Notes: generated by a model from the sequence alone, not told the origin. Positions 938 to 62,155 are shown, counted from the stretch's first letter. The stretch is DNA of 64,000 nucleotides from IMGVR_UViG_3300043446_004613:1-64000; one strand, 5' to 3'. Translations and numbers: made by a program.

Positions 938-1282
938 GTGAGCGCGAATATCATCGTAAACCGGCTACTTGAAAGCGATCTCGACGCACCGTCACCGGAC
1001 GTTAGTCCAGCGGAATTGGTCGCACCGAACTATAGACCTAAGCCGCGATCCAACGTCAGCCGGTTTGCAGAACCTTACCTTGAATTGAACGGCAGACTTG
1101 GTGAAGGCAAAGGTTTGACGCTGTCGTCCTATCTGGGCACGCAGCTATCCTTCAGCACCATCGCGAGCTACGGTAAACAGTACAAACTAGCACTTCAGCG
1201 GGCGATGGATGATTACGTCAATACCGGTTTAGCCCGTCAAGGTCGCTCCAGTCGTGGCGGCGTAGCTTACTACCCTGTCTGA
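938..1282 (+). CDS. Putative head-packaged protein with LLE tag
   Basis: Starts MSANIIVNRLLE|SDLDAP; TAGTTA upstream. Confidence 0.6.
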   Translation: MSANIIVNRLLESDLDAPSPDVSPAELVAPNYRPKPRSNVSRFAEPYLELNGRLGEGKGLTLSSYLGTQLSFSTIASYGKQYKLALQRAMDDYVNTGLARQGRSSRGGVAYYPV

Positions 1283-1304
1283 GCTTCCACAGTTACGCTT
1301 CAAC

Positions 1305-1541
1305 TCATTTACGCCGACTGTAGCTGACGCGCATGCTTGTGATGTACGGACGGCTGATCTCCGGGTCAACGGTGTAGCCTTCCGCTTCAAGGCGAGCGCG
1401 AGCTTCGGCGATGGCGCTGGCCTCATCCTCGAACGGAACGTAGTCCTGCACCACCGGCCCGCAGTAGCCCATGCGGCTGCCGAACAGGGCGATCTTGCCG
1501 TCGCTGATGGCGATCTGGGCTTCTTTGATTTCAGTACTCAT
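1305..1541 (-). CDS. Hypothetical protein
   Basis: ORF track; fits minus-strand gene packing. Confidence 0.5.
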   Translation of the reverse strand: MSTEIKEAQIAISDGKIALFGSRMGYCGPVVQDYVPFEDEASAIAEARARLEAEGYTVDPEISRPYITSMRVSYSRRK

Positions 1542-1656
1542 ATAGGTAAGTGTTTACATTGTACCCACCACCCGGTCGGCTCTTGGGTTACCTGCGTGAA
1601 CCCGTCCAGCGCAGCTAAACGCTCCATCTTCTGTTTTTCGTCGTAGGGCGTAGGTA

Positions 1657-1896
1657 TCAGCTGGGACGGATTTTATCCTTGGACAGATTCATCTGAGCGG
1701 CCACAGCCTGTACGGCGGCGTTCAGTTTGTGCGGTGTGATCTTAGGGTTGCCGTCGTTAGCGACCTGACAGTAACAGAGCAAACTCATCCCGCTCAGCAT
1801 AGCGGCGATGATCTCGCTTCTATGTTCCGGCGCGATCGGCGCGGTGTTGGCGTATTTGTTTACAGCGTCCGTGATTTGTTGTTCAAGGCTATTCAT
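1657..1896 (-). CDS. Hypothetical protein
   Basis: ATG at 1896 overlaps the upstream stop (ATGA coupling). Confidence 0.5.
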   Translation of the reverse strand: MNSLEQQITDAVNKYANTAPIAPEHRSEIIAAMLSGMSLLCYCQVANDGNPKITPHKLNAAVQAVAAQMNLSKDKIRPS

Positions 1897-2321
1897 GCAA
1901 GGTAGGCGAGCGCGAGTGCGTTGCAAAGTAGGTGGAGAGTGTTGTCGGTAATGATCAGCAACCAGATGCGCATCCAGATCGGCTTGATGTCGGACTTCAG
2001 CTTAGGCTTACCTTCCCATACGGGACAGACTTCCTCGTCGTAATAGCCGGTCATGCGGCACTCGTTCCACGGATAGTAACCGTTCGGCCCGATATGGTTC
2101 TTGGCCCAGATGACGCAGCGGGCCAGCCCGAAGCGGTCGATCAGGAAATGCGTGCCGTAGATGGCGAGCAAAGCCCACACCGAGTGGGTAAGCAGGATGA
2201 ACGGTAACGTGTAACAGAGACAGTGGACAGCGCAGGCTAGCGTGCTGTTGCGCTTGTTGGCTGCCATCCAATCGGACTGAAGAATGTAATCTCCGACGAG
2301 GTGGGCGATGAGTTGGTTCAC
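1893..2321 (-). CDS. DUF3307-like membrane protein
   Basis: HLVGDYILQSDWMA..K, HCLCY, THFLID and DNTLH motifs. Confidence 0.8.
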   Translation of the reverse strand: MNQLIAHLVGDYILQSDWMAANKRNSTLACAVHCLCYTLPFILLTHSVWALLAIYGTHFLIDRFGLARCVIWAKNHIGPNGYYPWNECRMTGYYDEEVCPVWEGKPKLKSDIKPIWMRIWLLIITDNTLHLLCNALALAYLA

Positions 2322-2509
2322 GTGTTCTTAGGTTTAATCCACGGGTGGTCGGTGTATCTCCAGTTGGTCATTGTGCGCTTCAACGCGCCACAGTCTGGAC
2401 ACCAATACACAACAACTGTACCCATGCCTTCCATAGAACTGCCTACATCAACTTTGTTGGTATGCTTGCAGCTGGGTCGTTGCGTAGGCTTTTTGGTGAG
2501 ATCGCTCAT
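2318..2509 (-). CDS. Small Zn-ribbon-like protein
   Basis: CxH...WCPDCG; start chosen downstream of the promoter motif. Confidence 0.5.
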   Translation of the reverse strand: MSDLTKKPTQRPSCKHTNKVDVGSSMEGMGTVVVYWCPDCGALKRTMTNWRYTDHPWIKPKNT

Positions 2510-2527
2510 GACGTAATCAGACTGAAG

Positions 2528-2557
2528 TGTATACACTTTGGCTTCTGATCCGTCAAC
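2528..2557 (-). promoter_or_regulatory. Early sigma70-like promoter (GTTGAC...TGTATACA)
   Basis: Matches the motif recurring at about 10 operon heads. Confidence 0.6.
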
Positions 2558-19508: not shown

Positions 19509-19946
19509 ATGACCGCGCCACAGCAGATTGTAGGACGGCTTCTTGAAGACGAAGTAAATCCGCAAGATTACATCGACGCACTGCCATTCAGTTTAGAAAT
19601 AAATCGTCTCGTCAAAGGGATCATGCGTGAAGCGCCGTACTGCATGGACGTGCCAGAAGAGAAGCAGAATTTTCTTAACTGGCTGGATAACAATTCGCAA
19701 TTATTACCGGACTTGGAGCGAGCCAAGGACATCATAACGGCGAATCAGTCGTGGTGCTTTGACAACGTCGAAGACGTAGCCCTGTTCATTTCGATGCTGA
19801 CCGGTAAAGTCCATACCGAAAATCCGTGCGAGCGCTGCGATGGTACCGGGGATGATCCAAATGATGTCGGCTACCTGTGCCCAGCGTGCTACGGGTGGGG
19901 CTACCAGCTTATCTCCGATCTCGGCTCCAAGGAACCTACACAATGA
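19509..19946 (+). CDS. LLE-tagged protein with DnaJ-type Zn finger
   Basis: IVGRLLE|DEVNPQDYID; CERCDGTG and CPACYGWG. Confidence 0.65.
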   Translation: MTAPQQIVGRLLEDEVNPQDYIDALPFSLEINRLVKGIMREAPYCMDVPEEKQNFLNWLDNNSQLLPDLERAKDIITANQSWCFDNVEDVALFISMLTGKVHTENPCERCDGTGDDPNDVGYLCPACYGWGYQLISDLGSKEPTQ

Positions 19947-20347
19947 AACCTAGATCAATCATATCCCGGATGCTTGAGGACGAAGAAGTCGATCGCTACG
20001 TCGACCAGTTGAAGTCCAGACCGAACATCAAGGATGTATTCGCAGCACTGGAAGCTGCGTTCGGTTTGGTAGACGGTTGGTGGCAGTACGTCAACGACCG
20101 CTGGCACGGCGGCCCGGTGCTAGTTGTGCTCGGAATCCCGACAACAAATACCGAAGACGTAAACGCTACGGCGATTGAGACACTGAGTCCGTTCGGTATT
20201 AAACCAGTAGACGTCTCGTATGACTTAGAGTTTGAGCAACTTTCCGTGTTTCTGCCGTTGGACAGTATCAACGCACCACCGCCAAAAACCAAAGAAGAGG
20301 CGGAAGAGGCTGACCTGTTCAGCGGTCGAGAGGAAGAAGGTAGTTAG
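19943..20347 (+). CDS. LLE-tagged protein
   Basis: MKPRSIISRMLE|DEEVDRYVD. Confidence 0.6.
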   Translation: MKPRSIISRMLEDEEVDRYVDQLKSRPNIKDVFAALEAAFGLVDGWWQYVNDRWHGGPVLVVLGIPTTNTEDVNATAIETLSPFGIKPVDVSYDLEFEQLSVFLPLDSINAPPPKTKEEAEEADLFSGREEEGS

Positions 20348-23230: not shown

Positions 23231-23626
23231 TCAAAGGTCACGCTGCCGCCTAACGTCATACACCTCGTAGCTGTACTTGAAACCCATGCGTTCAGCCACT
23301 ACCCACATCGGATCGCAGCTGCCGTTCTTGGAACGTTCGCGCTTGATGTACCCGTTATCTTCCAGCCACTGGGCAGCTGTCCACTGGAACTGATCACCGT
23401 AACCGTATTCCATCGGTGTTGTGTGGACAAGCTTGTCGTTAACGTAGATGTCTGCGACGTGATAGGTGTTGCCATACGTGCGCTGGAACCAGCGCCGACC
23501 GACTACGTGAATGGAGTCGATCTTATGGTGTTTGTTCTCGATCTCGTGATAGATGAACGCCATCGGATCATTCGGATCAAACGAATCATCTTCCAGCAGT
23601 GTTTTGGCAATAGTGCTCGCGTTCAT
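23231..23626 (-). CDS. LLE-tagged protein
   Basis: MNASTIAKTLLE|DDSFDPNDP; RWF..TYGNTYH...YGYGDQ domain. Confidence 0.65.
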   Translation of the reverse strand: MNASTIAKTLLEDDSFDPNDPMAFIYHEIENKHHKIDSIHVVGRRWFQRTYGNTYHVADIYVNDKLVHTTPMEYGYGDQFQWTAAQWLEDNGYIKRERSKNGSCDPMWVVAERMGFKYSYEVYDVRRQRDL

Positions 23627-24624: not shown

Positions 24625-27600
24625 TCACGGCTCAAAACGCATGGCGCTGAGCACTTCATCGTACCATTTGCTGTAATGGATACCGATCCGCTCGATCACT
24701 TTTGCCTCTTCTTCTGGCGGGACACTGCTGGCCGCACAGCGCTCAAGGGCTGAGTCGAGATCACGAAGCATGGCCGCCGCGCTGTTCGGTGTCTCACAGT
24801 TGACGTCCTGAGCCGCGTTGAGCCAAGTCTTGTCGCGATAGTTGTACACCCGCACAACAGCTTCTACAGTGTTTCCGCCAAACAGCCAGAGATGGATGGC
24901 GTGCTGATTTCCGTCCGGCGCTTTGATGCCTTTGATCCAGCTGCGCGTCATTGCCGACTCGGTGTTGTTGAAGATAAAAACTTCATGTTTTTCACCGTTC
25001 TTGGGTACGCTCCAACCAAGCCGCTGAAGCTCTGTCAGCAGCGGATTCGCATCCAAGTTGCCGATAATTCCTTCGGGATCGTCAGGATCAGAAGATTCAG
25101 CTACCGGCCCTTTGGCCAGCGCTTTAGCACGGGCTTCTAGTGCGTCAATGCCGTTGATTAAATCGTAAAATGACAGGCTGTGCTCGTGCTCCATATCGCG
25201 CCAAGCCATACCATCAGCCAGCCAGAACGTGACATCGTAGATCGTATTCGCGTCGTCTGTTGCTATGGAGCCGCGACGGCTGATACCGAGCATTACCTCG
25301 CGCTGACGTCCGCTGAGTTCATTTCGCGGCCCGCAGAATATCTTGTAGATGAGATCAGCTTCGCGGGTGTAGCCGCGCTGTTTTAGCATGTCGCGCAAGT
25401 TCAGTAGGTGCTCAGCCCCCTCAGCAGATGGTTCATCAAATGATTCTGCGTTCTCGACGATGCGCGGTTGCGTCCAACGCTTTATGCAGGCGTTCAATGT
25501 ATCCGCCAGTTGTGGCAGGTCGCAGGTAACTTCAAAATGTGTCGGCATGTACGCCGAGTCGAAGAAGTACGCTAAGTAGATGTGATAGGCGTACTCGCCA
25601 GCCGCTGGTTTTGTGCGGCGGTCACGATCCACGTAAATGTAGCGAGCCGGATCGTTCTTGCCACGGCCCTGATAAATCAGTTTTTTCCACTCAAGCGTAA
25701 AGCGATCATCATAGTAGCGCACCGGCTCGAACCCAAGCCGAGTAAGCAGCGCACTGGCTTCCTCTTCCTGCGAAAATTGCTCCTTGTAGCGTTCAAGGTC
25801 GCCAGTGTCATCGACGTCAGCAGCGCTCTCTTCGACGGCTTCTTCGTAATCTGCCGGGAATAGTTCAGCGGAGCGCTGGTACACGAGCGATCGGATGTGT
25901 TCAGCCTCCGGGCTTTCGTAGGAGATGTCGTTGTTGTCGATGTACTGGGAGGACACTTCAGATGCAAGTTCGTCCGCCCGGCGCGGCGTGAGATCACCGC
26001 GTTTGTTCGCCTGTCGGTCAAATTCAGCAACGGCCTGCTGGGCCAGCAGCTTGTACGCGTTAGCCACTTCGGCTGCGTAGGCATCAACACTGGCCTGTGC
26101 GTCTACATCCTCACTTTCCGTGACGCTCACCTCTGGAGGCACAGTGAAGTACAAACCGAAATCGCCATCGCTGAACGGAGCGTAAAACTCGAATTTACGT
26201 GCTTGAGGGCATGCAGAACGGATAGCCAGTACACCGTCTTTTTTGGCTTTATCCGCAATAGCGTCATACTCTTTGTCCGGCATATCATACGTAAGTTCAA
26301 GCGGACTGTTCCACTCCATAAGATATATCGTGCTGGGAGTCGGGTTGCTTTCACTGTTCGGCGGAAACGCCGCTCGGCAGTAAACATACTCGTAGCCTGC
26401 TTGTTTCAGGTTACCGGCAGCCTCTTTCAGCGAAAATGCAACGGGAAGTTTGTCGATGTAGCCAGCTACATCGTCATCAGGAAGCTCAAAGCTTTCACGA
26501 ACCGGCTTGCGCGGAAAACGGACAAGTTCGTCACGCATGCTCGTGTCCCAGCGGCGAATTTCTTCTTCAGGCTCGTCATGTAAAAAGGCTAGTGACTCGA
26601 TGTCCGTTTCCCACCCGGCATCACGCATTGTCTTGATCCACTTCTGGTGAAACTTAGACTTACTGCCTTCATCCGGTAACGCAGTACCGGTTAGCTTTGT
26701 GGAGGTCTGGTCGGCGAGTTCACCAAGCTTTGCCAGCCATTTCCGGGCTACACCGGCTTTGCGCATCGATTTTGGCACGTACAGGCGGTCTATGTGAAAC
26801 GAGTCTTTGTTCGGTGTACCGCTGATCTTAACCCCGTTAGGCAGCGTCCAGTGATAATCTATCTGCACGGTGCCAGCGTTGTCTATTTCCTCAGCGTCCG
26901 TGCGCGTGGCCATAGCGGACATGGCCTCAATAAAAGGACTCTGGTAAACACTCATCTGGCGCTGAATGAACGGCTCGGGATCATCTTCTGATTCTTTGAT
27001 GTGCGCAACCATGCCGGGATGTTCGTTGAATACATCGGCACGCTTAGACGCGACAGTTGTATTCTGACTGATGAGCCACTCTTTAGGCGGAGGCTCTGAT
27101 GGTTGGAACAGTCGCTCTACATCATCAACATCTGTCTGCGTGAAACGATAAACGCCGATACGTTGGTCAACCGCAAAACCCTTCAGATCAATCATCTCGA
27201 TATTGAAATTAGGATAACGGTCGATTCGATGGGTGATACGTGTCGGGTAATAGTAGCAAACACCTCTACGATCGAGCTTAGGTGCTACGTACCAGCGATT
27301 CAAAAACTTCTGCGCCCGCTTATATTCATCCTTGTTTACGACGTCAACTGGAACCTCTGTATCGACATATTCCTGCGCATTGACGTCATCTTCCTGCGAC
27401 TCGTAGGTATTCACGTAGTTCATCCGAGACTCAGGCGTCAGCTGTGCTTTTGAGATCAGAAGAGAAAAGCCGGTTCCGGTAACATGCTTCCACGGCTCCA
27501 TCTTAATTCTATACGATGTAAGCTTGTGATCGGTACAAAACTTTTCCAGCTGATTGCGGAAAAACTCAGTTTCAAGCGGCTTGCCGTTTTCATCTTCCGC

Positions 27601-28740: not shown

Positions 28741-29052
28741 TTAGTCCCAAATTGAAGCCATGTTCCGTTTGAGGCGCTTTATGGCGGTGTCCACCTGAAC
28801 CTCGTCATCAAGTTCTTCACAGGCAATGCGGAGCAAGGCGCGGTTGATCACGTGATCGGGAATATTGCCGATCACGGATTGAGACAAAGCTCCGGCCTGT
28901 TGCGCCTGTTCCCGCAGGAATTTGGCATGATCGAGAATATCACGGACATCGGCGATAAGCCACGCGTCATTGGTGAAATGTTCCATGCCAATGGCGCTTG
29001 GGTCATCAAGAGCGTCGTTCTCGACCAGTTTACGGACATATAGCGAACTCAT
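28741..29052 (-). CDS. LLE-type tagged protein
   Basis: MSSLYVRKLVE|NDALDDP; TAGTTA at 29057-29062. Confidence 0.6.
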   Translation of the reverse strand: MSSLYVRKLVENDALDDPSAIGMEHFTNDAWLIADVRDILDHAKFLREQAQQAGALSQSVIGNIPDHVINRALLRIACEELDDEVQVDTAIKRLKRNMASIWD

Positions 29053-29537: not shown

Positions 29538-29882
29538 AGACGGCGGCTGCCACTTTTCAATCTGCATGATGGCCGCGTTGTAGTCTTCATGGGTTCCTAC
29601 CCAGCGCCAGTACCACGTATCAGGGTAGGCGTAGCAGATGGCTCGATAGCGTCGACCGAGACGGATAGACCACCAGCTTTTAGCCCGAGTGAGCTTCTTA
29701 AACTCAAGGCTGGGATCGAAAGGATTGGCACGCCACTGGGCAAATACCTCACGGGCTAGGTTTTGCACATCGCTGGGCAGTTTTGACAGGAGCTTGTCAA
29801 ATTCGCGGCTGCGCTTGGAGGCTTTGCCTGCGACTACGACAGTGTCATCAAGAAGCAGGTTTACGATCAGGTTCGCGTTCAT
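29532..29882 (-). CDS. ParE/RelE-superfamily toxin-like protein with N-terminal tag
   Basis: F.KL...LP..VQ..A......NPF.PSL.FKKL...WSIR.G..YRA...WVGTHEDYN. Confidence 0.75.
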   Translation of the reverse strand: MNANLIVNLLLDDTVVVAGKASKRSREFDKLLSKLPSDVQNLAREVFAQWRANPFDPSLEFKKLTRAKSWWSIRLGRRYRAICYAYPDTWYWRWVGTHEDYNAAIMQIEKWQPPSS

Positions 29883-35807: not shown

Positions 35808-36468
35808 CTTTATTCCTGATTACGGCATTACAGGCGTCGTAGTTGCACCGTACCTTTTTGTAAAGCGCTGCGGGCTTGAACCCAGTGCCGGTCGAAATCC
35901 AAGTTTCATAGTAGCTGCGGGTAACCGTATCGGGCCGTTCGGGCGCTTGAATGGTTCGGATGTAGCTTGCACTAGCCCACCAGAAGTTACCGGAAAAGAA
36001 CTGACCGTTGAAATTTATGCCGCAGCAGTTGGCAGCACTTAACCGGCGCAGGCACGTTTGATAATCGGTAAGGCAGGCAAAATTCATCAGATCGCGCCAG
36101 CCTTTGACGCCAGCAGCACTAGGACGTGTTAAACCTGTCTCAGACACTACACCTTTTGAGTGGAAATATAGAACACGAGCGTCATGTAGTAAGCAGTAGT
36201 CGTGAAGCAGCTTTAGCGTAGGGTACTCGAACTTGTTGCCTCTACCAGAGTGTATACGCAATTTATCGTAGCCGCTAAACATCTGGCCGAATTCCACTAA
36301 AGCAGAGGCGTCTTTTGCCTGAACCCCGCAGACTACTGTCGAAGCTTCGTCATACAGACCGCTCTCTTGCATTAAACGGAACTGTTCAGAGACTATTTCT
36401 TTCCAGTTGTTTACAAGATACACGTGGTAGAAAACAGCAATAGGCTCATGTATACTCAGGCTTATCAT
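35761..36468 (-). CDS. Putative glycosyltransferase-like protein
   Basis: FEYPTL, VLYFHSKG, WR..M and FSGNFWWA...YI motifs, as in large-virus glycosylation clusters. Confidence 0.6.
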   Translation of the reverse strand: MISLSIHEPIAVFYHVYLVNNWKEIVSEQFRLMQESGLYDEASTVVCGVQAKDASALVEFGQMFSGYDKLRIHSGRGNKFEYPTLKLLHDYCLLHDARVLYFHSKGVVSETGLTRPSAAGVKGWRDLMNFACLTDYQTCLRRLSAANCCGINFNGQFFSGNFWWASASYIRTIQAPERPDTVTRSYYETWISTGTGFKPAALYKKVRCNYDACNAVIRNKAIWLQVPGGLQAEEP

Positions 36469-38448: not shown

Positions 38449-39003
38449 ATGAATAAGAAAGCAGCCCAAATTGTAAGCAACCTTCTTGAGTACGGTGTCG
38501 ATCCCGACGCGCCCCGTCCGGGCGGCCCGGAAGACCCGTGGCGTCAGTCCAGCGGCCCGCTGCCGCCGTTCACCGTAAAAGCCCGCCCCGGTCACGAAGA
38601 TGAAGTGATTGACGAGATTCCAGCAGAAGAAGATGAAGCTCCGGTCAAGCCTGCACCAAAGCCTAACAAGCACTTGGGGCGCTTCAACATCACTTTTCCG
38701 CCGTCAATGGAATCGGTGCCAAGTGCCCGCTCTTTGCTGCATGAACTGGGCGGCCACTACTGCACCACGTGCCGCAAGCCGACGGAAGGCTCATTCGACC
38801 CCAAGAGCAAAAAGGTCGTCTGTAAACACTGCGGTAACGAACTTGTCTATCCCAAGTCTTCGTCACTTCGTTCACGCGAGGTCGTTCACGGAAAATCTGC
38901 CAATGAATCGTTGAAGAAAGCCTGCTGGAAAGGTTACGAGGCTGTCGGCACCAAAAAGAAAGGCGGGCGCACGGTGCCAAACTGCGTCCCGAAAAAGAAA
39001 TGA
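38449..39003 (+). CDS. LLE-tagged protein with Zn ribbon and CWKGY...VPNCVP module
   Basis: IVSNLLE; CTTC..CKHC; ACWKGYEAVGTKKKGGRTVPNCVP as in T4-like phage proteins. Confidence 0.7.
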   Translation: MNKKAAQIVSNLLEYGVDPDAPRPGGPEDPWRQSSGPLPPFTVKARPGHEDEVIDEIPAEEDEAPVKPAPKPNKHLGRFNITFPPSMESVPSARSLLHELGGHYCTTCRKPTEGSFDPKSKKVVCKHCGNELVYPKSSSLRSREVVHGKSANESLKKACWKGYEAVGTKKKGGRTVPNCVPKKK

Positions 39004-39254: not shown

Positions 39255-40486
39255 TGGAAACGCGCCACCAGCGCCTCATGGCGATATTGACGCCACTTCA
39301 GCGAGTCATGCTCGATCTGGACGTGGCCGTCACTGGTGTACCGATAGAGCAGGCCGTCACGCAATACCACCATTACCCGAAAACGGTTGAAGACTGGCTC
39401 AACGAACCCGGCGGTAACCCGGAGTGGTACTTGTCTGACGGAGGGTATAGCCGGATAATCTGGATGCCCTACGCGGATAACGTGAACGACAACCACCTAT
39501 TTTTGACAGACAACAGCACGACTAAAGCAAAAGCTCGCTGGGAGAACGCGCTGACTCAACGCAAAGCTGCCTTAAACCTGCTTCACGCTGAACTAGGCAG
39601 ACTAGAAGAAAGCAGTGATGACGATCCAAATACTTTCCTAACGCATTACCGGCCACTTCCGACGGTCAGGCTGCATACCGGCGAGGTTGTTCCAAAGTAC
39701 TGGCGGTGCTTAGACACCATTTGGTACTGCGGTGGTCAGGATGACGATGACTGTATACGTGAAGATGAAATCGTAACTGTCGATCCTAGTGAATATGAAA
39801 GTTTCAGGTTCAAGGCCGACGAGTTGGCGTTCAACGAGCACGCTTCACGCTACGGCCCGTGGAACCGGGATGACTTTGAACCGCTGACGTTGGAAGAGAT
39901 TGACGCTATGAACTTAAAAGAGTCAACTGAACGTCCTGAATTTAAGCCCGGTGCTTTTGGTCGCCCCAAGCGCAAAGACCCGCGCTATCCGACTGATTTG
40001 CGCTATCCTAACGATCCGCACGCACAGGTAGTTCATGAGCTTGGCGGCAAGCTGGTTTACGCGCCGCTTCCGTCACGCGCCAAGTGGAACGCCATGCTTG
40101 CAGCCTACGCACCCGGCTGTGGCTCACCAACACCCTATCCCGGCACCGGCGGCACCGCCCCATGCGGTTCTAAGGTGGAAGGTAAACTGTTTCTGTGCCC
40201 GCACTGTGAGTCATCAAACCTAACAACGGAATCGATCACGAGCGTGCTCTGCGAAGATGGCGCTTCACCTTTCAGCAAGCAGCGCGTCAAGCTCCAGTAC
40301 CGGCCCTATACGTTCGGAGAGGATTGGAAATGGTTTTGGGTGCTACTGCCGGAAGACGGACGGGCTGCGCTGGCTAACGGCGAAGCTGACACGCGGGCAG
40401 CTGCCTCAGTGCAGGCACGGCTAAAGGCACGTCAACTGCGTATGATCGTTGATAAGGTCGAGGTTGTTTTCTCGCACAAAGACTAA
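39251..40486 (+). CDS. 411-aa modular polyprotein
   Basis: LEE|SSDDDPNTFL, LKE|S and TTE|SITSVLCED linkers. Confidence 0.65.
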   Translation: MMETRHQRLMAILTPLQRVMLDLDVAVTGVPIEQAVTQYHHYPKTVEDWLNEPGGNPEWYLSDGGYSRIIWMPYADNVNDNHLFLTDNSTTKAKARWENALTQRKAALNLLHAELGRLEESSDDDPNTFLTHYRPLPTVRLHTGEVVPKYWRCLDTIWYCGGQDDDDCIREDEIVTVDPSEYESFRFKADELAFNEHASRYGPWNRDDFEPLTLEEIDAMNLKESTERPEFKPGAFGRPKRKDPRYPTDLRYPNDPHAQVVHELGGKLVYAPLPSRAKWNAMLAAYAPGCGSPTPYPGTGGTAPCGSKVEGKLFLCPHCESSNLTTESITSVLCEDGASPFSKQRVKLQYRPYTFGEDWKWFWVLLPEDGRAALANGEADTRAAASVQARLKARQLRMIVDKVEVVFSHKD

Positions 40487-41316: not shown

Positions 41317-42618
41317 CTATTGTTGATTAGACGGCACTTCGCAGCGGTGTGACCCGGTTTCTATGTCATCGTGTGAAATTAGCTTACCACAATTTTCGCA
41401 CGGATACGTAGGTGTTGAGTCGAGATGTCTGTACTCCAGCTTATGTCCGTTAGGGCACTCGTAGCAGTCGAGATCGTCAGGGTCACCGGCTTCAATACCG
41501 TCGAAACCTGCGCGTAGATAGCTGAAATCATTCAGCAAGCTACCTGTTTCGCCGCAAGCAGGGCAGCGAACAATAGGAAAACTGACACCACCGTCTACGT
41601 CTGGCTCAACAAATTCCAGTCTATGCGGAACTTCAAGCGTCCTTACGTCAATATTTTCAATATCACGCTCGCTAGGATCGTCAATATCTTCCAACAAGCC
41701 TGAACGGTAGACAGCTTCTTTCAATTTTGTATACGTCGCCGCATCAAAAGCGTCGCCAACATCAAGGGTAAGCGCTGCTACCGGCATTTTTGAGCGAAGA
41801 TGATCCAAAATATCCAGAGGGACGCCGCGCAATCGTAGAGCATCCCAGTCAATGTCTGCTCCGGCTTCGAGCACGTGTCGGTTTTCCTTCAGTGCCGGTA
41901 GAATAAGGCTTTCATAGCGCCACATTGCGTCTGAAACGCGCAAAAGGCACTCTAAAACCGGGGTAAGCTGCCGTCGATTGTGCGCTCTTTCCAGAGCCGA
42001 GCTAGTGCTCTCAAAAATTTTAGCCGTGATGCTTGCTGCTTTAGGTAGATTTTCGGCTAGGCGTTTGGCAAAGGCAGGTGCCGCAGCGCCGGTTAACCGG
42101 ATATGGTGACCGTAAACTGCATCTGGAGCTTGAAGAACGTTGCTTGTGGGGTAACCAAGTGCTTCGGCTTCCTCAATCAACTCTTCAACGATGCCGCCGA
42201 CGTCGTGTACACGGCTCGCTGCTGCCGCGATGGCGAGGCGGTCGGTACCGTTCAAGCTGCCCAGTGCGTTTACAGGCGTCCATTCGACCTTAGTGACGTC
42301 ACCACCACCCGGTTTGGCCTTGGTGTTAGGTTCAACGATGGCGTAGTAGAGCGTGACCGGCAGTTTCCGCGCCGCATGGCTGGCCAAAAAGAGCGGTTGA
42401 GGGTCGACATCCATGCCTGTCTCTTCTCTGACTTCACGCTTGCAGGATTCGACACCTGATTCGGCACCGTTGGCATGACCTCCCGGTATGCTCCAACGTC
42501 CGATTTCATCGGCAACCAGTGCAACTTCCAGTCTGTCGTTTGTTTTGCGCAGGACAACGCATAGGTACGATTGATCGTCCGTATCGGTCATCTTCTGGAT
42601 CAAAGCTTCTGCGCTCAT
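41317..42618 (-). CDS. Nudix hydrolase plus degenerate dTMP-kinase-like domain plus Zn-finger cassette
   Basis: GGH....ES....KREVREETG Nudix box; LL..SD.......ILPALK...VL; LLE|DIDDP; CPAC, CPNGH and CENC. Confidence 0.75.
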   Translation of the reverse strand: MSAEALIQKMTDTDDQSYLCVVLRKTNDRLEVALVADEIGRWSIPGGHANGAESGVESCKREVREETGMDVDPQPLFLASHAARKLPVTLYYAIVEPNTKAKPGGGDVTKVEWTPVNALGSLNGTDRLAIAAAASRVHDVGGIVEELIEEAEALGYPTSNVLQAPDAVYGHHIRLTGAAAPAFAKRLAENLPKAASITAKIFESTSSALERAHNRRQLTPVLECLLRVSDAMWRYESLILPALKENRHVLEAGADIDWDALRLRGVPLDILDHLRSKMPVAALTLDVGDAFDAATYTKLKEAVYRSGLLEDIDDPSERDIENIDVRTLEVPHRLEFVEPDVDGGVSFPIVRCPACGETGSLLNDFSYLRAGFDGIEAGDPDDLDCYECPNGHKLEYRHLDSTPTYPCENCGKLISHDDIETGSHRCEVPSNQQ

Positions 42619-43751: not shown

Positions 43752-43754
43752 AAG

Positions 43755-47322: not shown

Positions 47323-48438
47323 TTAAACAGCAGGCGGTCGCTTCACGATCGCGTTCCAAATTTGCTTTTCCTGCTCTTCGGTAAAGCCGTGCAGGTGGTA
47401 CGCTAACTCTGTCTCCACCCCCGTGCGGTAATCCTGACTTACGCCGTCGGAATACCATACGCCGACGTGAAAGTGACTGGATGACTGGCGCGTCGCGCAT
47501 TCTTTCTTTAAGAACTTGATCGCTTTATCGGCGGCAGTGATACCTTCAGAATAATCAAATTCATCCGGCTCCATGCTGACACCTTCCTCGTCTATCCAAC
47601 CCGTTTCTTCATAATCTCCGTTCGCCGCACTTTCGGGGCTTACTTTATAGTACGAAATAGTGATACGCGGGCCGGGTAAATCTGGCATGCTGGCGACAAA
47701 CTCAGCCGGGTCGTCGGGATCAGCGCTCTCGCCGATAAATGAATCGACATGCCAGCTTGAAGCCAGTCCGCGCAGCGGCTCACACAGACGCATGAAGTCA
47801 TCTAGGTACGCCTGACGGGATTTGCGCCGCTTCATCATAACACATACCTGTTTGGCAACAGCGTAGACGGCGTCCCGACGCGGGATGTAGTCCGCATCGC
47901 TCTCGAACGGCACTATGACAACAGCGTCACCGTAGTATCCGACCGTGAAGATCAATTTCAATTCGCCACCCGCGACATAGTCACGTGGATTACCGGTATT
48001 ATGATTCGTGTGGGACGAAAGCCGGAACTCGTTGTAGCGCGTACCGTAGTCAATGAGCAGCCGCCAGCTTTCGCTTCCGTAGTGCCCGCGTGAGTATTCT
48101 TCCTCCTCCATACCCCAGTTGGAAGGTAGTTCTAGGTCGTGAATATAGTCAATCGGGCTGACGTCTTCTTCCGACTCGCCAAGGTTATTCGGATGCAGCG
48201 GGTCAAACCAGATGCCGCAGTCGCCGCAATCAACCAAGCCTTCATCATCCGGCTCGGTCACCTTAGTGCTCTTGCATGCCGGGCAGTGACCGGGAAAAAT
48301 CCGGTCAAGGGCGGCCTGCGGATCGAACGCATCGACCGCGTTGTCGAGCAAACTGCGCACAACGTCGCGAGCTTCAGCAATCGTCACCGAACGCTGAATC
48401 GAAGCTAGAAAATCGAGATTGGCAGGTGTCTTAGACAT
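47323..48438 (-). CDS. 371-aa modular polyprotein (3 cassettes)
   Basis: VVRSLLD; LGE|SEEDVSPIDYI; IGE|SADPDDPAEFV; Zn ribbon. Confidence 0.7.
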   Translation of the reverse strand: MSKTPANLDFLASIQRSVTIAEARDVVRSLLDNAVDAFDPQAALDRIFPGHCPACKSTKVTEPDDEGLVDCGDCGIWFDPLHPNNLGESEEDVSPIDYIHDLELPSNWGMEEEEYSRGHYGSESWRLLIDYGTRYNEFRLSSHTNHNTGNPRDYVAGGELKLIFTVGYYGDAVVIVPFESDADYIPRRDAVYAVAKQVCVMMKRRKSRQAYLDDFMRLCEPLRGLASSWHVDSFIGESADPDDPAEFVASMPDLPGPRITISYYKVSPESAANGDYEETGWIDEEGVSMEPDEFDYSEGITAADKAIKFLKKECATRQSSSHFHVGVWYSDGVSQDYRTGVETELAYHLHGFTEEQEKQIWNAIVKRPPAV

Positions 48439-54434: not shown

Positions 54435-55691
54435 CTACGCAGGCTGAGGCTGACCGATAACGCCACGCAAACGAGCTTCACCTTGATTACCGTTACGATA
54501 TGCCTGAACAGCGCGGGCAAGTTCGCTGCTGCCGCGTTTAAGCAATTCCATAGGGAAACGCTGCGCATCAGCAAAAAGAGGCGCGACATTGCGGGCTTCT
54601 TCCGCAGTGATCTGGCTGTTGTAAGGATTGCGCACCTGTCCTGACTCGAAATGCGCCAGCACATAGGGACGGTCGTTTCGATCGGCAAAATAAAGTGGGC
54701 CTTGGTTTGCGTAAGTGTCCGCATGGCTACCTTTAGTACACCAAGTAGGCCAGTACCCTTCACCGTTTTCAGCGGGTGTTAGATTGCCCATTCGCCACAA
54801 CGCAGCGTCAACAGCACGACGGCTGAACGCTTTGACTGTTTCCGGGAAAATGGTTTTGCGCAACGTATATTCGCCATGCTGTGCAATCGTCTTGCCGTCT
54901 TTGGTGAACACCCACGGCTTTTCTTTCACTTCAACCGTGAAGTCAGCTGACTTTTTAAGGACGTCACGGAAACCGGCAACATCGTCGGCTTTCATGCCTT
55001 TGAGGCGGTCAAGCAGAGCATCCGCTTCCTGACCGTTGATGATCTCAACCTGCTCTTCACGGTTCATGGTCGCCATGTTCTTGTTGCGGTTGTTCTGATA
55101 GAAATTTGACAACACCGCCTGATAATTCAGGAAATTAACGACATTGTTTAGCCTAATGAAAAGCTCACGGCGGCGTGTTTGGATTGGATCAAAATGATGC
55201 AGTTCCTTCTCGTCGTTTCCTGCTGCCGTCATCCACGGCTGGAGTTCGCTCTTGGTCGGCGGTTCGCCAAAAGCACGCTTGGCTTTAGCCTTGGTCGGCT
55301 TGAATTTTTGGAACGACTGCTCGATGTCTTTCTGCACGACTGGCTCGTGCAGCGCCGTCGTGTAAGTGCGCTTCTCAGGATCGTACTCTTCGCGCACAGG
55401 CAGCGGGCTTTTCGGTGATTCAGATTCCGGCTTTCCGTGCGCCATCCAACCGCCCTTCGGAGAGTAGTAATACTTGCTTGAACCATGAGGGCGAGGCTCG
55501 GCTTTCGCCACATACGGTTCTTTAAGGAGACGGTCAATGTTTACAAGAAAATAGCGGGGTACGCGCTTGAACCATCCCTGAGCGCGTGGGTCGCTGAGCT
55601 TGGCAGCAAGCTTGTTGATCTCGTTATCAATGTCTTTGACGTTGATCACGTTCAATTCCAGCAGCAAATCGACAAGTATATTAGCGTTCAC
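54435..55691 (-). CDS. LLE-tagged paralog of the PcfJ-like protein
   Basis: Start reassigned to GTG 55691 (MNANILVDLLLE), TAGTTA 4 nt upstream; shares NV.DI..E and FDPIQ.RRR.L; TWCT..Y..QGPLY. Confidence 0.7.
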   Translation of the reverse strand: MNANILVDLLLELNVINVKDIDNEINKLAAKLSDPRAQGWFKRVPRYFLVNIDRLLKEPYVAKAEPRPHGSSKYYYSPKGGWMAHGKPESESPKSPLPVREEYDPEKRTYTTALHEPVVQKDIEQSFQKFKPTKAKAKRAFGEPPTKSELQPWMTAAGNDEKELHHFDPIQTRRRELFIRLNNVVNFLNYQAVLSNFYQNNRNKNMATMNREEQVEIINGQEADALLDRLKGMKADDVAGFRDVLKKSADFTVEVKEKPWVFTKDGKTIAQHGEYTLRKTIFPETVKAFSRRAVDAALWRMGNLTPAENGEGYWPTWCTKGSHADTYANQGPLYFADRNDRPYVLAHFESGQVRNPYNSQITAEEARNVAPLFADAQRFPMELLKRGSSELARAVQAYRNGNQGEARLRGVIGQPQPA

Positions 55692-57890: not shown

Positions 57891-57891
57891 G

Positions 57892-58161: not shown

Positions 58162-58578
58162 ATGAAACGCGTGTACACAGACAATCGGATGCCCGGTGTT
58201 GAGATCGTGAACCACGGAAAGGCCGTGTTTGAGGTCTATAAAGACAACCGACTCCACTCAGCTTTTGACTCGTATGAGCGCCCAGACGGCACGGTAACCG
58301 AAGAGTTTGCTTTCCGCCGTGCGACCAAATGGTTTGACCGTGTCTGTGAAACCGGCGAATTCAAGCGTGTTCAGATTCCAGACGATCTGGATCATACGGA
58401 TATTCTCAACTCAGCTGAGAAGGCTACTTCTCGTCAGATTGACGCGCTCATGGCGCAGGAAAAAGCTGAAACCGATCCCAACCGGAAAAGTCAGCTGCGG
58501 AAACGCTTATTGCAGATGATGGCGCAAGAAGAGTCATTGGCTGAATCCGTCGTCAGCCATCTACTCGAAGAGCGCTGA
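58162..58578 (+). CDS. Protein with C-terminal LLE tag
   Basis: Ends LAE|SVVSHLLEER. Confidence 0.6.
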   Translation: MKRVYTDNRMPGVEIVNHGKAVFEVYKDNRLHSAFDSYERPDGTVTEEFAFRRATKWFDRVCETGEFKRVQIPDDLDHTDILNSAEKATSRQIDALMAQEKAETDPNRKSQLRKRLLQMMAQEESLAESVVSHLLEER

Positions 58579-59926: not shown

Positions 59927-60333
59927 TGCGGTTCTTGTGGTTTATACAGGCGAGTCACAGTCCAGTTCTCTGGGCTGCTCCACATATATGTCCACGAACT
60001 CGCGCCAACATAACTACCGTTGCTGTCGTAACCGGTCACGCTGACCAGCGTTTTGTCGTAACACGGTTCCAGCGAAAAGTGCGGCATGCTGTACAATCCG
60101 TACTGATTATACCCGTAAGCCGGGCCAGACGGAAAATAGCTGTTACTGTTTTTGACCACCATAACACAGCCATTCGTCAGATCGCACACGTAGTCGCCAT
60201 TTTGGTAGACTTTAAGCGTGTAACCGCTGTTGTTTACCAGCGTCGACTTTGGCAGTTCCAGCACGGTAGACGTATACTTGAATGAAGCGCATCCAGTCAG
60301 CAGGACAAGCGGCAGTAGCAGTAGTGTTTTCAC
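59923..60333 (-). CDS. Lipoprotein
   Basis: GTG start MKTLLLLPLVLLTGC. Confidence 0.65.
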   Translation of the reverse strand: MKTLLLLPLVLLTGCASFKYTSTVLELPKSTLVNNSGYTLKVYQNGDYVCDLTNGCVMVVKNSNSYFPSGPAYGYNQYGLYSMPHFSLEPCYDKTLVSVTGYDSNGSYVGASSWTYMWSSPENWTVTRLYKPQEPQ

Positions 60334-60530
60334 CGACGAACCTTTCCAGTGCCTTGGCACATGTCGCACGTATGCGGCGTGTCGCCGTAGCGTGCCATGA
60401 CCTCAGTAGAATAACGGCCTTCTCCGGCGCACTGAGGGCAGCGCCGACGGAAGGGCCAGCCGGTTAGTTCCCACATGACCCACATGCGGAACCGGTCGCG
60501 TAAATTTGAGATGGTGTAGCTGATGTTCAA
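60330..60530 (-). CDS. Small DnaJ-type Zn-finger protein
   Basis: CPQCAGEG and CDMCQGTG. Confidence 0.6.
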   Translation of the reverse strand: MNISYTISNLRDRFRMWVMWELTGWPFRRRCPQCAGEGRYSTEVMARYGDTPHTCDMCQGTGKVRR

Positions 60531-60979
60531 GAATGGTGTTTATGCTCGATGTCGACCACGGCCCCAGCTAAGCGCTGCGACTTTGCAGCCAGCCGGATGC
60601 GCCGGTCTGCCGCCGCGATTGCCCGACGTTCGCGACTGACTTTGAGTTTTTCTTTGCGTTCACGCGCACGCTCAAGCTGGGCACGCAGAGCGCGGTTACG
60701 GAGTCCCCATGCGTAGATGTCCTTCAGATTTAAGCGTACTTCTTGCCGCGTGCCTTTGGGGTAAAGCACCAGCTGGTCAACGGCGACAAGACCGACAACA
60801 AGTTTGCGGTGTTTATCACGGCCATACTGGCCTCCGAGCGTGTCGCGGGTTTGACGCCAGACATCGCTGGTAGCGACTTTGGTTTCAGGAGAGCCTTCAG
60901 CCGTGCGTTTGATGGTAAGTTTGCCGTTCGGGCCTTTGACCCGGACAGCGATAATTTTGGTTTTGCCGATCTCAATCAT
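60527..60979 (-). CDS. Hypothetical basic protein
   Basis: Start placed after the early promoter. Confidence 0.55.
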   Translation of the reverse strand: MIEIGKTKIIAVRVKGPNGKLTIKRTAEGSPETKVATSDVWRQTRDTLGGQYGRDKHRKLVVGLVAVDQLVLYPKGTRQEVRLNLKDIYAWGLRNRALRAQLERARERKEKLKVSRERRAIAAADRRIRLAAKSQRLAGAVVDIEHKHHS

Positions 60980-60988
60980 GCCGCATAG

Positions 60989-61016
60989 TGTATACAGCGG
61001 CATATAACGAGTCAAC
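60989..61016 (-). promoter_or_regulatory. Early sigma70-like promoter
   Basis: AAATTTTGGTGTTGAC-N14-TGTATACACT. Confidence 0.65.
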
Positions 61017-61024
61017 ACCAAAAT

Positions 61025-61321
61025 TTAATTATCCTCAAGCAGCACAGCAACAATCGACTGGGCGGACTCGCGCATGGACTTTTCACCACGACACTTCCAC
61101 TTCTTACGGGAAAGTGCGTTGGGGCTGTTGGGATCGTTGCGCCAGTTGCCCTTGATGTGTGCGGAGCGTGCGCAGTAGGCGTCACCCTTGCTCGTGCCGG
61201 GACGGATGCGGTCGCCGCCGTCCTTGGCCTTACCAGCCTGTCCGTAGCGGACAGTCTTAGTGCGACCTGTTTCCGGGTTTTTGACGACTTTCTTAAAACG
61301 TTTTTTGACGGTGTCAGCCAT
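61025..61321 (-). CDS. DUF6321-like basic protein with C-terminal LLE tag
   Basis: KTVRYGQAG...YCARS...SRKKWKC; ends MRE|SAQSIVAVLLEDN; TAGTTA upstream. Confidence 0.65.
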   Translation of the reverse strand: MADTVKKRFKKVVKNPETGRTKTVRYGQAGKAKDGGDRIRPGTSKGDAYCARSAHIKGNWRNDPNSPNALSRKKWKCRGEKSMRESAQSIVAVLLEDN

Positions 61322-61327
61322 AGCGCT

Positions 61328-62155
61328 CTAACTACGTATGGCCGATAATATTTTAATCACCCGGTCGATAATGTCCGCATCACCCGAGGTGGCGTAATCA
61401 TCTGCGTAGAGGACGTCGCAGATACGGTTATAGGCTGCCGTGGTCAGGCGACGCTCACCGTTTCGAGCAGGATATTCCGGCGAATTGGTGTAGTACTCCA
61501 GTTCGCGCAGGCGCTCGGCAATACGGCCCAGTCCGGCGACAGCATCGTCACGTCGATCGAGCGTGGATTGCCGACTTAAACGGCGCAGCTTTCGGGCAAT
61601 GACTTTCAAAAGCTGGATTATTTCCTGCCGAGCTTCGGCGTTATTCAGCGCTATTGCGTTCCAGCTTTCCGCGTTTCTTTTGGCTACGGAATCAGCAAAG
61701 TCACTTACGTAGTTCTCAGCGTCCACTTCATCTTCCAACAAGGTATTAGCCAATGACTCGACGTTGAAACGTTTACGTATGCCAGAAACGTGCTCCTGCT
61801 CTTTGGCAATCTCCATATCGCGACGCTCCGCGTATTTTTGGGCTAAGCGCTGGATAGCGGTTTTTATCGTAGCCTGTATACCGGCGGGCAGCTTGGCGGC
61901 ATGCAGCTTGCCGCCGATAAGACCGACGAAAGCTTCGTAAGCTTGCTCCGGCTCCAGTTCAAGGATGCGTTCAACAGTGGCCGGTTTAACTTCGACCTGC
62001 TTGCTTCCGAGATAGTTGTACAGCGCCTGTAGCACATTATCCGGGCGATCATCACGATCCAGCGCCTGTTTGAGCGCAAGGTACTGTGGCGTCCAAATAC
62101 CTGTTGGATTTGTCGGGCCGGACAAATCGCTAAAATTGGCAGCAAAAGCTTTCAT
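61328..62155 (-). CDS. Two-cassette LLE-tagged protein
   Basis: NVE|SLANTLLE|DEVDAENYVSD; TAGTTA at 62162-62167. Confidence 0.65.
   Translation of the reverse strand: MKAFAANFSDLSGPTNPTGIWTPQYLALKQALDRDDRPDNVLQALYNYLGSKQVEVKPATVERILELEPEQAYEAFVGLIGGKLHAAKLPAGIQATIKTAIQRLAQKYAERRDMEIAKEQEHVSGIRKRFNVESLANTLLEDEVDAENYVSDFADSVAKRNAESWNAIALNNAEARQEIIQLLKVIARKLRRLSRQSTLDRRDDAVAGLGRIAERLRELEYYTNSPEYPARNGERRLTTAAYNRICDVLYADDYATSGDADIIDRVIKILSAIRS

What the first reader, a model, noticed from the sequence alone, without database searches (positions are those of the whole stretch)
938..62155. Shared ~12-aa amphipathic 'LLE' tag resembling a capsid-targeting sequence, used at N-termini, internally and at C-termini
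Seen at N-termini: MSANIIVNRLLE (938), MTAPQQIVGRLLE (19509), MKPRSIISRMLE (19943), MNASTIAKTLLE (23626), MSSLYVRKLVE (29052), MNANLIVNLLLD (29882), MTGRILANRILE (38419), MNKKAAQIVSNLLE (38449), MNANILVDLLLE (55691). Seen internally: VIVAKLLE (33507 ORF), SLANTLLE (61328 ORF), DVVRSLLD (48438 ORF), SGLLE (Nudix). Seen at C-termini: AESVVSHLLEER* (58162) and RESAQSIVAVLLEDN* (61025). The protein bodies are unrelated. Established knowledge: T4 internal proteins carry a ~10-aa capsid targeting sequence ending in Glu that gp21 removes. Inference: this is a portable packaging tag; C-terminal copies preceded by their own E|S site would be an unusual placement and suggest position-independent targeting.
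Basis: partly seen in the sequence, partly recalled or inferred. Interest (0 to 1): 0.85.

Follow-up and report, generated by a model that had tools for sequence, protein, structure and literature searches.

The report
Portable cleavable address tag on phage proteins
An uncultivated 211-kb jumbo phage puts the same roughly 12-residue helix, always separated from the protein body by a Glu-Ser bond, on the start, middle or end of many unrelated accessory proteins; it most likely acts as a cleavable label for loading cargo into the virion, but no experiment yet shows this.

Summary
A motif M-[SNT]-A-x-x-[IVL]-[VA]-x-x-L-L-[ED] occurs 14 times in the window: 9 at exact N-termini, 3 internal and 2 C-terminal. 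A simple pattern gives 13 hits against 0.9 expected. The protein bodies share no detectable similarity.

It is part of a larger grammar. The tag is followed by an acidic junction, hydrophobic-x-E-S-(D/E)n-D-P-x-x-[YF]-hydrophobic. The same junction, without the helix, splits the giant ORFs of 1367, 965 and 657 aa into modules (18 observed, 1.3 expected).

Relatives show the tag is an add-on. Most homologues of one body lack it. One family of 62 clusters carries it at the C-terminus. Modules are swapped, fused or lost exactly at junctions.

The Glu sits at the tag-body boundary in either orientation. N-terminal tags read tag-LLE|S-body. C-terminal tags read body-E|S-tag, with no Glu needed after the LL.

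Replication, recombination, tail and terminase proteins lack the tag.

Best reading (about 0.4): a T4-CTS-like targeting helix, removed by a Glu-specific maturation protease that also cuts the polyproteins. Neither the protease nor the capsid genes were found, and there is no proteomics. I rate it a new variant of a known kind, interest 0.7.

The parts
938..1000 (+). N-terminal tag MSANIIVNRLLE plus junction S-DLDAPSPD of a 114-aa protein (938-1282)
   Evidence: JGI gene call of the same length
19509..19553 (+). N-terminal tag MTAPQQIVGRLLEDE of a 145-aa protein with a CxxC zinc ribbon
19943..19984 (+). N-terminal tag MKPRSIISRMLEDE of a 134-aa protein; its start overlaps the preceding stop (ATGA)
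23585..23626 (-). N-terminal tag MNASTIAKTLLEDD of a 131-aa protein; the body is a phrog_6246 domain
   Evidence: AF2 model has helix 3-12, loop, helix 21-31, then a confident body
29011..29052 (-). N-terminal variant tag MSSLYVRKLVEND followed by ALDDPS, on a 103-aa protein
29841..29882 (-). N-terminal tag MNANLIVNLLLDD on a 116-aa protein with a ParE-like toxin domain
   Evidence: (PF24732, E 4.6e-13)
36446..38419 (-). 657-aa multi-module protein. N-terminal tag MTGRILANRILE|S. Junctions at aa 10, 135, 405 and 537 meet the criterion; a further ES junction at aa 273 (NYES-LDVDSP) has only two acidic residues in the next eight and does not
   Evidence: most multi-module relatives keep an MTARxIANRLLE-like N-terminus
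38449..38496 (+). N-terminal tag MNKKAAQIVSNLLEYG of a 184-aa zinc-ribbon protein; divergent from 38419 with only 29 nt between the two starts
55650..55691 (-). N-terminal tag (GTG start) MNANILVDLLLELN of a 418-aa protein; conserved in the L003 and L005 orthologues
33912..33968 (+). Internal tag AGVIVAKLLE|S plus junction DVDDPSPN, at aa 136-154 of the 237-aa ORF 33507-34220
61727..61762 (-). Internal tag VE|SLANTLLE|DE in the 275-aa ORF 61328-62155. Orthologues end here, so the window protein is a fusion with an extra C-terminal domain
48337..48372 (-). Near-N-terminal tag ARDVVRSLLD|N in the 371-aa ORF 47323-48438 (terminase operon). Junctions at aa 86 and 235; the middle module is absent from the L004 and L005 orthologues
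58540..58575 (+). C-terminal tag AESVVSHLLEER, then stop, on ORF 58162-58578; an ES lies two residues before the Ala
61028..61063 (-). C-terminal tag (RE|S)AQSIVAVLLEDN, then stop, on the 98-aa ORF 61025-61321
24625..28728 (-). 1367-aa untagged ORF divided by seven junctions of the form hydrophobic-x-E-S-acidic (aa 177, 325, 577, 743, 869, 965, 1209); it starts with DDPDQYV
30606..33503 (+). 965-aa untagged ORF. ES-acidic junctions at aa 501 and 776; D-x-DDP junction sites near aa 234 (E-A) and 666 (E-S)
39602..39637 (+). Junction LEES-SDDDPNTF in ORF 39251/39308-40486
41317..42618 (-). Nudix protein (433 aa). Degenerate N-terminal tag MSAEALIQKMTD; junction LLEDIDDPSE near aa 307, after which the L004 orthologue no longer aligns

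Best explanation
The tag is a cleavable address label. A two-to-three-turn amphipathic helix (S/N/T cap, then A-x-x-I/V-V-x-x-L-L) docks otherwise unrelated accessory proteins to one common phage-encoded receptor. That receptor is most likely the scaffolding core or inner surface of the procapsid.

A maturation protease that cuts after Glu, as the T4 gp21 and phiKZ gp175 type does, then severs the Glu-Ser bond between tag and body. It cuts tag-LLE|S-body at N-termini and body-E|S-tag at C-termini. It also cuts the same hydrophobic-x-E|S-acidic junctions inside multi-module proteins, releasing the modules as separate cargo that travels with the DNA.

Shown here: the motif, its non-randomness, its portability, the boundary rule that holds in both orientations, module exchange at junctions, and which proteins carry it. 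Inferred: the docking, the cleavage, the identity of the receptor and the capsid as destination.
For: 1. Form. The tag is about 12 residues, starts exactly at M-x-A and ends in L-L-E. This matches the description of the T4 CTS and its L/I-x-E processing site. It also resembles the conserved N-terminus of SPN3US gp53/gp54, MANFVKSKLARE|S, and the phiKZ gp93 site SLE-13.

2. Boundary rule. In 62 cluster representatives of the C-terminally tagged family, ES precedes the tag in 58. Only 16 have E or D after the LL. N-terminal tags of the 38419 family have E after the LL in 19 of the 21 that the pattern scored. Independent C-terminal tags on unrelated bodies also have an upstream ES.

3. Junction enrichment. 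[ILVM]xES followed by at least 3 acidic residues in the next 8 occurs 18 times against 1.3 expected. The ES dipeptide occurs 113 times against 76. The control patterns SE, EA, DS, [ILVM]xDS and [ILVM]xSE are not enriched. When sites are selected on ES plus acidity alone, P3 is I/L/V in 17 of 26 sites (65%), against a 23% ILVM background.

4. Portability. The 23626 body is a widespread 88-100-aa stand-alone domain. Only a few homologues carry the tag, and no cultured-phage homologue covers it. Module 2 of the 657-aa protein exists as untagged 90-170-aa proteins. Fusion, fission and module loss occur at junctions.

5. Cargo-like carriers. These include a ParE-like toxin domain, a Nudix protein, zinc ribbons and multi-module proteins. 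Eight consecutive tagged genes lie in relative L006.

6. Context. Tagged genes sit in operons with a tail-assembly chaperone and PKD proteins (16.7-22.8 kb) and with the terminase.

7. Absences. The tag is missing from ligase, PolA, DnaB, RecA-like, helicase, RusA, tubulin, baseplate J, TerL and PKD proteins, and from two clusters of small genes.

8. The genome has a T4 gp13-like neck protein. This hints at T4-like morphogenesis.
Against: No prohead protease, major capsid protein, portal or scaffold was recognised in the window or in about 77 kb of flanking genome. The only peptidase-like hits are an M20/M28-type enzyme and a weak 'PhageMetallopep' match without an HExxH motif.

At least 22 tagged proteins in about 141 kb is many more than T4's handful of CTS proteins.

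The long acidic D-D-P stretch after the Ser is not a known feature of gp21 or gp175 sites, so it may serve another purpose.

Some tags end in Asp, which blocks processing in T4.

In the C-terminally tagged family the hydrophobic residue is at P2, not P3.

Tagged proteins show no charge bias.

There is no proteomic, structural or genetic evidence.
Confidence: 0.4

Rival explanations
1. The tag is a docking motif for a hub that is not the capsid. It would recruit many accessory proteins to one phage or host partner in the infected cell, such as a chaperone, an assembly platform or a compartment. Nothing is cut, and the acidic D-D-P stretch is only a flexible spacer.
For: Short helical motifs joined by disordered linkers at either terminus are typical of hub binding. 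The AF2 model shows helix 3-12 at lower confidence (pLDDT 72-80), separated by a loop from a confident body. The number of carriers is high, at least 22 in about 141 kb. No capsid protease was found.
Against: It does not explain why Glu marks the tag-body boundary in both orientations but is dispensable after the LL of C-terminal tags. It does not explain why the same hydrophobic-x-E-S junction recurs between modules that have no helix. No candidate hub was identified.
Confidence: 0.25
2. The tag and junction are a lineage-specific building convention. A capping helix plus an acidic linker would have been inherited with modules as they were shuffled, serving only to keep modules soluble and independent, with no addressing role.
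For: Junctions coincide with points of module exchange. The D-D-P-x-x-Y-hydrophobic part stays at the N-terminus of stand-alone modules, for example the start of the 1367-aa ORF and of P0062, P0068 and P0079. This suggests it belongs to the downstream module.
Against: The tag is kept at a free C-terminus, where there is nothing to link, in 60 of 62 family members at 45-100% identity. It has been added to a domain that normally stands alone. Codons differ between copies, so conservation is selected at the protein level. The ES enrichment is specific, since the controls are flat.
Confidence: 0.15
3. The tag is an import or localisation signal for a phage-made compartment, such as a phage nucleus.
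For: The genome encodes a tubulin/TubZ-like protein, as nucleus-forming jumbo phages do.
Against: DNA ligase, PolA, DnaB, the RecA-like protein, the helicase and RusA all lack the tag. In known nucleus-forming phages no linear import signal exists (PMC11087766). No chimallin was identified.
Confidence: 0.07
4. The pattern is chance, a compositional bias or a gene-calling artefact.
For: The search patterns were written after seeing the data.
Against: Enrichment over shuffles is 14-fold overall and about 100-fold at N-termini. The motif is replicated independently in relatives and in two large protein families. An unrelated phage gives no hits. Public gene calls agree on the protein lengths, hence the starts.
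Confidence: 0.01

Closest known systems
T4 capsid targeting sequence (CTS) of IPI/IPII/IPIII and Alt, removed by prohead protease gp21
   Same: A 10-19-residue N-terminal propeptide with an amphipathic character. It ends at a hydrophobic-x-Glu processing site. It sits on divergent, fast-evolving internal proteins and suffices to carry foreign cargo (PMC9026906; PMC5694885). Alt is also processed at its C-terminus.
   Different: No sequence homology was established and no gp21 homologue was found. Here the same tag is also used internally and at C-termini. It is followed by a long acidic D-D-P junction and occurs on many more proteins.
Propeptides of phiKZ/SPN3US giant-phage head and ejection proteins (gp175/gp245 protease)
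   Same: These are giant phages that cleave after Glu. Diverged paralogues gp53/gp54 share a conserved N-terminal 15-mer, MANFVKSKLARE|SVE. Long proteins are cut at several sites.
   Different: Their motif is S/A/G-x-E, whereas here P3 is mostly I/L/V. Their propeptides are often longer than 100 residues, and the conserved N-terminus is shared by paralogues only, not by unrelated bodies.
P1 DarB N-terminal packaging signal
   Same: An N-terminal stretch (30 residues are sufficient) directs a large anti-restriction protein and a reporter into the capsid (PMC9024508).
   Different: There is no consensus among the Dar proteins, no cleavage grammar is described, and it is N-terminal only.
Encapsulin cargo-loading peptides and microcompartment encapsulation peptides (recalled from my own knowledge, not tested here)
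   Same: Short portable peptides at either terminus, joined to unrelated cargo by flexible linkers, that bind the inside of a shell. Encapsulin shells have the phage HK97 fold.
   Different: They are not removed by proteolysis and have different sequences. They are cellular compartments, and no such shell gene was seen here.
Polyvalent proteins of phages and conjugative elements (Iyer et al. 2017, PMC5512222)
   Same: Multi-domain effector proteins, proposed to be packaged, injected and proteolytically separated into domains. This fits the 657-, 965- and 1367-aa modular ORFs.
   Different: Those use MuF or portal fusions and embedded peptidase domains. No shared short tag or conserved junction motif is described for them.

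Membership tests
T4-type capsid targeting sequence | Short (10-19 residue) propeptide at the extreme N-terminus | tested here: met
   Nine window proteins start M-x-A-x-x-hydrophobic-V-x-x-L-L-E. Met lies exactly 4 residues before the first hydrophobic residue in 9 of the 13 N-terminal tags aligned from this genome, 9 from the window and 4 from flanking loci.
T4-type capsid targeting sequence | Propeptide ends in the gp21 processing logo (L/I-x-E) | tested here: met
   Of 20 aligned tags from this genome (window plus flanks), 16 end in L-L-E-like sequence with E at the last position and 4 have D. D is reported to block processing in T4.
T4-type capsid targeting sequence | A gp21-family prohead protease encoded by the phage | tested here: inconclusive
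   None was found by Pfam or PHROGs in the window, nor among the precomputed Pfam hits for about 77 kb of flanks. About 70 kb of the genome was not seen. A T4 gp13-like neck protein is present.
T4-type capsid targeting sequence | Carrier proteins are found inside the capsid with the propeptide removed | not testable with these tools
   This needs virion proteomics, and no cultured relative exists: the terminase is at most 27% identical to any cultured phage.
T4-type capsid targeting sequence | N-terminal placement only | tested here: not met
   There are three internal and two C-terminal copies in the window. A 62-member family carries it at the C-terminus.
phiKZ/SPN3US-type head-protein propeptides | Cleavage motif S/A/G-x-E | tested here: not met
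   P3 is I/L/V in 17 of 26 window junctions (65%) and L in the tags. P1 Glu is shared.
Encapsulin / microcompartment cargo peptides | A cognate shell protein encoded nearby | tested here: not met
   No encapsulin or microcompartment shell family appears among the Pfam hits of 97 window proteins. The 25 best of 34 matched families were shown, and the rest are weaker than about 1e-4.
Polyvalent proteins (Iyer et al. 2017) | Two or more effector-type modules in one polypeptide, encoded among late or packaging genes | tested here: met
   The 657-aa ORF has about five modules, and one of them also exists as stand-alone proteins. The 1367-aa ORF has seven junctions. Tagged genes lie in the terminase and tail operons.
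Polyvalent proteins (Iyer et al. 2017) | A MuF or portal anchoring domain, or an embedded processing peptidase | tested here: not met
   No such Pfam hit was obtained. No HExxH or GDSG motif occurs in the window proteins.

The most novel reading that the evidence does not exclude
A broad clade of uncultivated jumbo phages uses one position-independent, cleavable zip-code helix together with a universal hydrophobic-x-E|S-acidic-D-P junction. With these it loads dozens of modular effectors into the procapsid, including toxin-like and Nudix modules, and cuts them into separate modules. This would be a phage polyprotein-plus-cargo-peptide system in which new cargo is recruited simply by fusing it to the tag at either end.
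Probability: 0.3. Interest if true: 0.85.

Novelty: new variant of a known kind. Interest (0 to 1): 0.7.

Why it matters
If the tag is a cleavable address label, the known capsid-targeting principle (T4 CTS, P1 DarB) becomes a general, sequence-readable code. The injected or packaged proteome of an uncultivated phage clade could then be read directly from its genome.

It would also flag many proteins of unknown function as likely early-acting effectors. It would show polyprotein-style processing in a tailed phage. And it would offer a compact tag that works at either end for loading foreign proteins into large capsids.

Even if the destination is not the capsid, the result still points to an undiscovered hub. 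A conserved short motif on about one in ten genes, with a Glu-Ser boundary that holds in either orientation, implies such a partner.

Tried and rejected
- Nearest cultured relatives: none. DNA and protein searches of the phage collection gave no match for a 20-kb stretch or the 965-aa ORF. The terminase is at most 27% identical to any cultured phage.
- Pfam, PHROGs and PDB sequence searches of the large ORFs returned nothing useful. Three protein-atlas searches were uninformative.
- A census of the tag in large databases failed. A region-restricted homology search returned only the query itself. A degenerate-pattern scan of IMG/VR returned only this genome and a near-identical contig. A short profile cannot reach significance against billions of proteins, so I did not try one.
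- Searching for the protease and capsid genes used all 12 contig look-ups. It covered contig positions of about 60-127 kb and 14.6 kb upstream. It found replication, recombination, lysozyme, baseplate, tubulin and gp13-like genes but no head module.
- The peptidase hits are an M20/M28-type enzyme and a weak metallopeptidase match without HExxH.
- A fold search with the 23626 model found no significant match; the best E was 0.03.
- Rejected: a DNA repeat or recombination cassette, because codons differ. The terminase 'IAKAMLE' as a tag, because it is not conserved. A charge bias of the carriers. A replisome or nuclear-import tag.
- The second structure prediction and the read-mapping tools were not used, because they would not distinguish between the hypotheses.

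Full report
SOURCE. The window is the first 64 kb of a 211-kb viral contig, IMGVR_UViG_3300043446_004613, which is JGI Ga0451716_0000011. It has no close cultured relative. The large terminase (48768-50945, minus strand) is at most 27% identical to any terminase in the phage collection. A 20-kb DNA stretch and the 965-aa ORF gave no match at all. There are no tRNAs or Rfam hits.

Public gene calls give the same protein lengths for 938, 38419 and 55691.
- Aligning 20 copies from this genome gives the logo M(-4)-[NSTK]-A-x-x-[IVL]-[VA]-x-x-L-L-[ED]-[DSNE]-[DE].
- On 115 gene calls, the pattern [ILV][IVA]xx[LM]L[ED] occurs 13 times against 0.90 in within-protein shuffles. It occurs 7 times in the first 18 residues (0.07 expected) and twice in the last 13 (0.03 expected).
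- An HMM of the core separates the 14 window copies from everything else in the window. It also finds copies it was not built from: in relatives L003, L004 and L005 (terminase 64-77% identical), in L006, and in this genome outside the window.
- Twenty-five kb of an unrelated 595-kb phage gave no hit.
- Codons differ between copies, so selection acts on the peptide.
- The bodies have no mutual BLAST similarity. They include a ParE-like toxin domain, CxxC zinc ribbons, a phrog_6246 domain and a 418-aa protein of unknown function whose neighbour is weakly PcfJ-like. A Nudix protein carries a degenerate copy.

THE TAG IS HALF OF A LARGER GRAMMAR.
- After the tag comes an acidic, proline-containing stretch and then a second short helix, for example LLE-S-DVDDPSPNPDEIDRLL.
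- The same junction, hydrophobic-x-E-S-(D/E)n-D-P-x-x-[YF]-hydrophobic, recurs without the helix inside large proteins. There are seven in the 1367-aa ORF and three more in the 657-aa ORF beyond the one after its tag. There are two ES-acidic plus two D-x-DDP sites in the 965-aa ORF, two in the 371-aa ORF, and one each in the Nudix and 392-aa ORFs.
- [ILVM]xES followed by at least 3 acidic residues in the next 8 occurs 18 times against 1.3 expected.
- ES (113 against 76) and [ILVM]xES (41 against 17) are enriched. SE, EA, DS, [ILVM]xDS and [ILVM]xSE are not.
- When sites are chosen only by ES plus acidity, P3 is I/L/V in 17 of 26 window sites (65%), against a 23% ILVM background.
- An AF2 model of the 23626 protein (38-sequence alignment, mean pLDDT 91) shows helix 3-12 (the tag, pLDDT 72-80), a loop, helix 21-31 and then a very confident body.

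THE TAG IS PORTABLE, AND JUNCTIONS ARE MODULE BOUNDARIES.
- The 23626 body (GRRWFQRTYGNTYH...) is a widespread 88-100-aa stand-alone domain. Of the 18 homologues aligned, out of 38 found, only about five carry a tag-like N-terminus. No homologue in cultured phages covers the tag.
- The 657-aa protein has 59 relatives. About 21 of the 31 longer ones (30-46% identical) keep an MTARxIANRLLE-like N-terminus that the pattern recognises, and several more do by eye. Their module content varies. Module 2 also exists as untagged 90-170-aa proteins.
- The 275-aa ORF 61328-62155 carries the tag internally. Its orthologues in L003 and L005 stop right after the tag, so the window gene is a fusion.
- The middle module of the 371-aa ORF, which lies between its two junctions, is missing from the L004 and L005 orthologues. 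The L004 orthologue stops aligning with the Nudix protein at about residue 303, just before its junction.
- Relative L006 has eight consecutive genes that all carry the tag.

THE GLU-SER BOUNDARY HOLDS IN BOTH ORIENTATIONS. This is the most informative result.
- All 62 cluster representatives of the C-terminally tagged family (45-100% identical, on contigs up to 240 kb) contain a tag-like pattern near the C-terminus. Sixty of the 62 end within four residues of the L-L.
- ES precedes the tag in 58 of the 62. The residue after the L-L is E or D in only 16.
- In N-terminal tags of the 38419 family, that residue is E in 19 of the 21 tags the pattern scored.
- Unrelated C-terminal tags also have an upstream ES: RE|SAQSIV, TE|SRAQRIV and EE|SLAESVV.
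- So the Glu belongs to the tag-body boundary, not to the tag's own surface. This is what a scissile bond predicts, and what a pure binding helix does not.

WHO CARRIES THE TAG.
- In about 141 kb of this genome there are at least 22 tags.
- Carriers are small accessory proteins or multi-module proteins. Several lie in operons with a tail-assembly chaperone and PKD proteins, or with the terminase.
- Proteins without the tag: NAD-ligase, PolA, DnaB, the RecA-like protein, the ResIII helicase, RusA, tubulin, baseplate J, TerL, the PKD tail proteins and the gp13-like neck protein.
- Two clusters of small genes also lack it: window 4-16 kb and the 14.6 kb upstream of the window.

MECHANISM. I commit, at about 0.4, to a cleavable address label. 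The helix would dock cargo to a common receptor, most plausibly the procapsid core. A Glu-specific maturation protease would then remove the tag and cut the junctions.
- This matches the T4 CTS in length, position and terminal hydrophobic-x-Glu.
- It matches the rule that T4, phiKZ, 201phi2-1 and SPN3US head proteases all cut after Glu.
- It also fits the polyvalent-protein concept of packaged, processed multi-domain effectors.
- It remains inference. No protease, capsid or scaffold gene was found in what I could read. The acidic D-D-P stretch has no precedent in those cleavage sites. Some tags end in Asp. There is no proteomics.
- Rivals: a non-capsid hub-docking motif (0.25), a lineage-specific linker convention (0.15), a compartment import signal (0.07, disfavoured because replication proteins lack the tag) and chance (0.01).

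NOVELTY. Literature searches found the T4, P1 and phiKZ/SPN3US precedents, but nothing that describes this motif, its use at both termini, or the junction grammar. I file it as a new variant of a known kind. It resembles capsid-targeting and cargo-loading peptides, and membership of the T4 CTS family is not established.

Noticed in passing
window 43749-43757 (minus strand) and 21001-21018 (plus strand): Two PKD domains are split in frame by a stop codon between adjacent ORFs...WTWDFGD-TAA-L-MSTSHDRNPIHTY and ...WDFGDGTIVNNP-TGA-LRAT-MNPTHLY. The L004 orthologue is one continuous 1181-aa ORF without that PKD insert. This could be programmed readthrough, a split domain or a recent disruption. 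Stop-codon usage gives no sign of global recoding (TGA 60, TAA 28, TAG 26).
   Followed up: partly
L004 14-4336 (terminase orthologue): The L004 terminase ORF is 1441 aa against 725 aa here. It has two large insertions, between residues about 157-509 and 1028-1377, possibly inteins.
   Followed up: no
L020 18265-19395; L023 19258-20028; window 63312 to beyond the window end: Outside the window the genome encodes a tubulin/TubZ-like protein and a T4 gp13-like neck protein. A 357-aa AcrVA2-like protein starts inside the window and runs off its end.
   Followed up: partly
L006 782-5284 (ENA ERZ27282949 k141_370278): Eight consecutive plus-strand genes all carry the tag, seven at the N-terminus and one internally. 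Several are paralogues, and the arrangement recalls a hypervariable cargo locus.
   Followed up: partly
window 9952-10302 and 10551-10832 (minus strand): A paralogue pair begins ...GLSDDPSAGYVADLLDTYVP and ...GIKDDPDETYVAELLDTLKP. This is the D-D-P-x-x-x-Y-V half of the junction followed by an LLD helix, in the reverse order to the tag.
   Followed up: no
window 38420-38448: Two tagged genes (38419 minus strand, 38449 plus strand) diverge with only 29 nt between their start codons, so their promoters must lie inside coding sequence.
   Followed up: no
window 39000-39254, 57321-58137, 58797-59399, 59923-60333: A cluster of small ORFs carries lipoprotein-type signal peptides (hydrophobic stretch, then Cys), suggesting a Gram-negative host envelope.
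   Followed up: no
window 38449-39003 (C-terminus) and 61025-61321 (N-terminus): A basic motif...GTKKKGGRTVPNCVPKKK at the end of one tagged protein and KNPETGRTKTVRYGQAG at the start of another, matches the ends of several PHROG families of unknown function, phrog_9737, 4359 and 727.
   Followed up: no
window 29532-29882 (minus strand): A ParE-like toxin domain (PF24732, E 4.6e-13) is fused to the tag. I did not look for a partner antitoxin gene.
   Followed up: no
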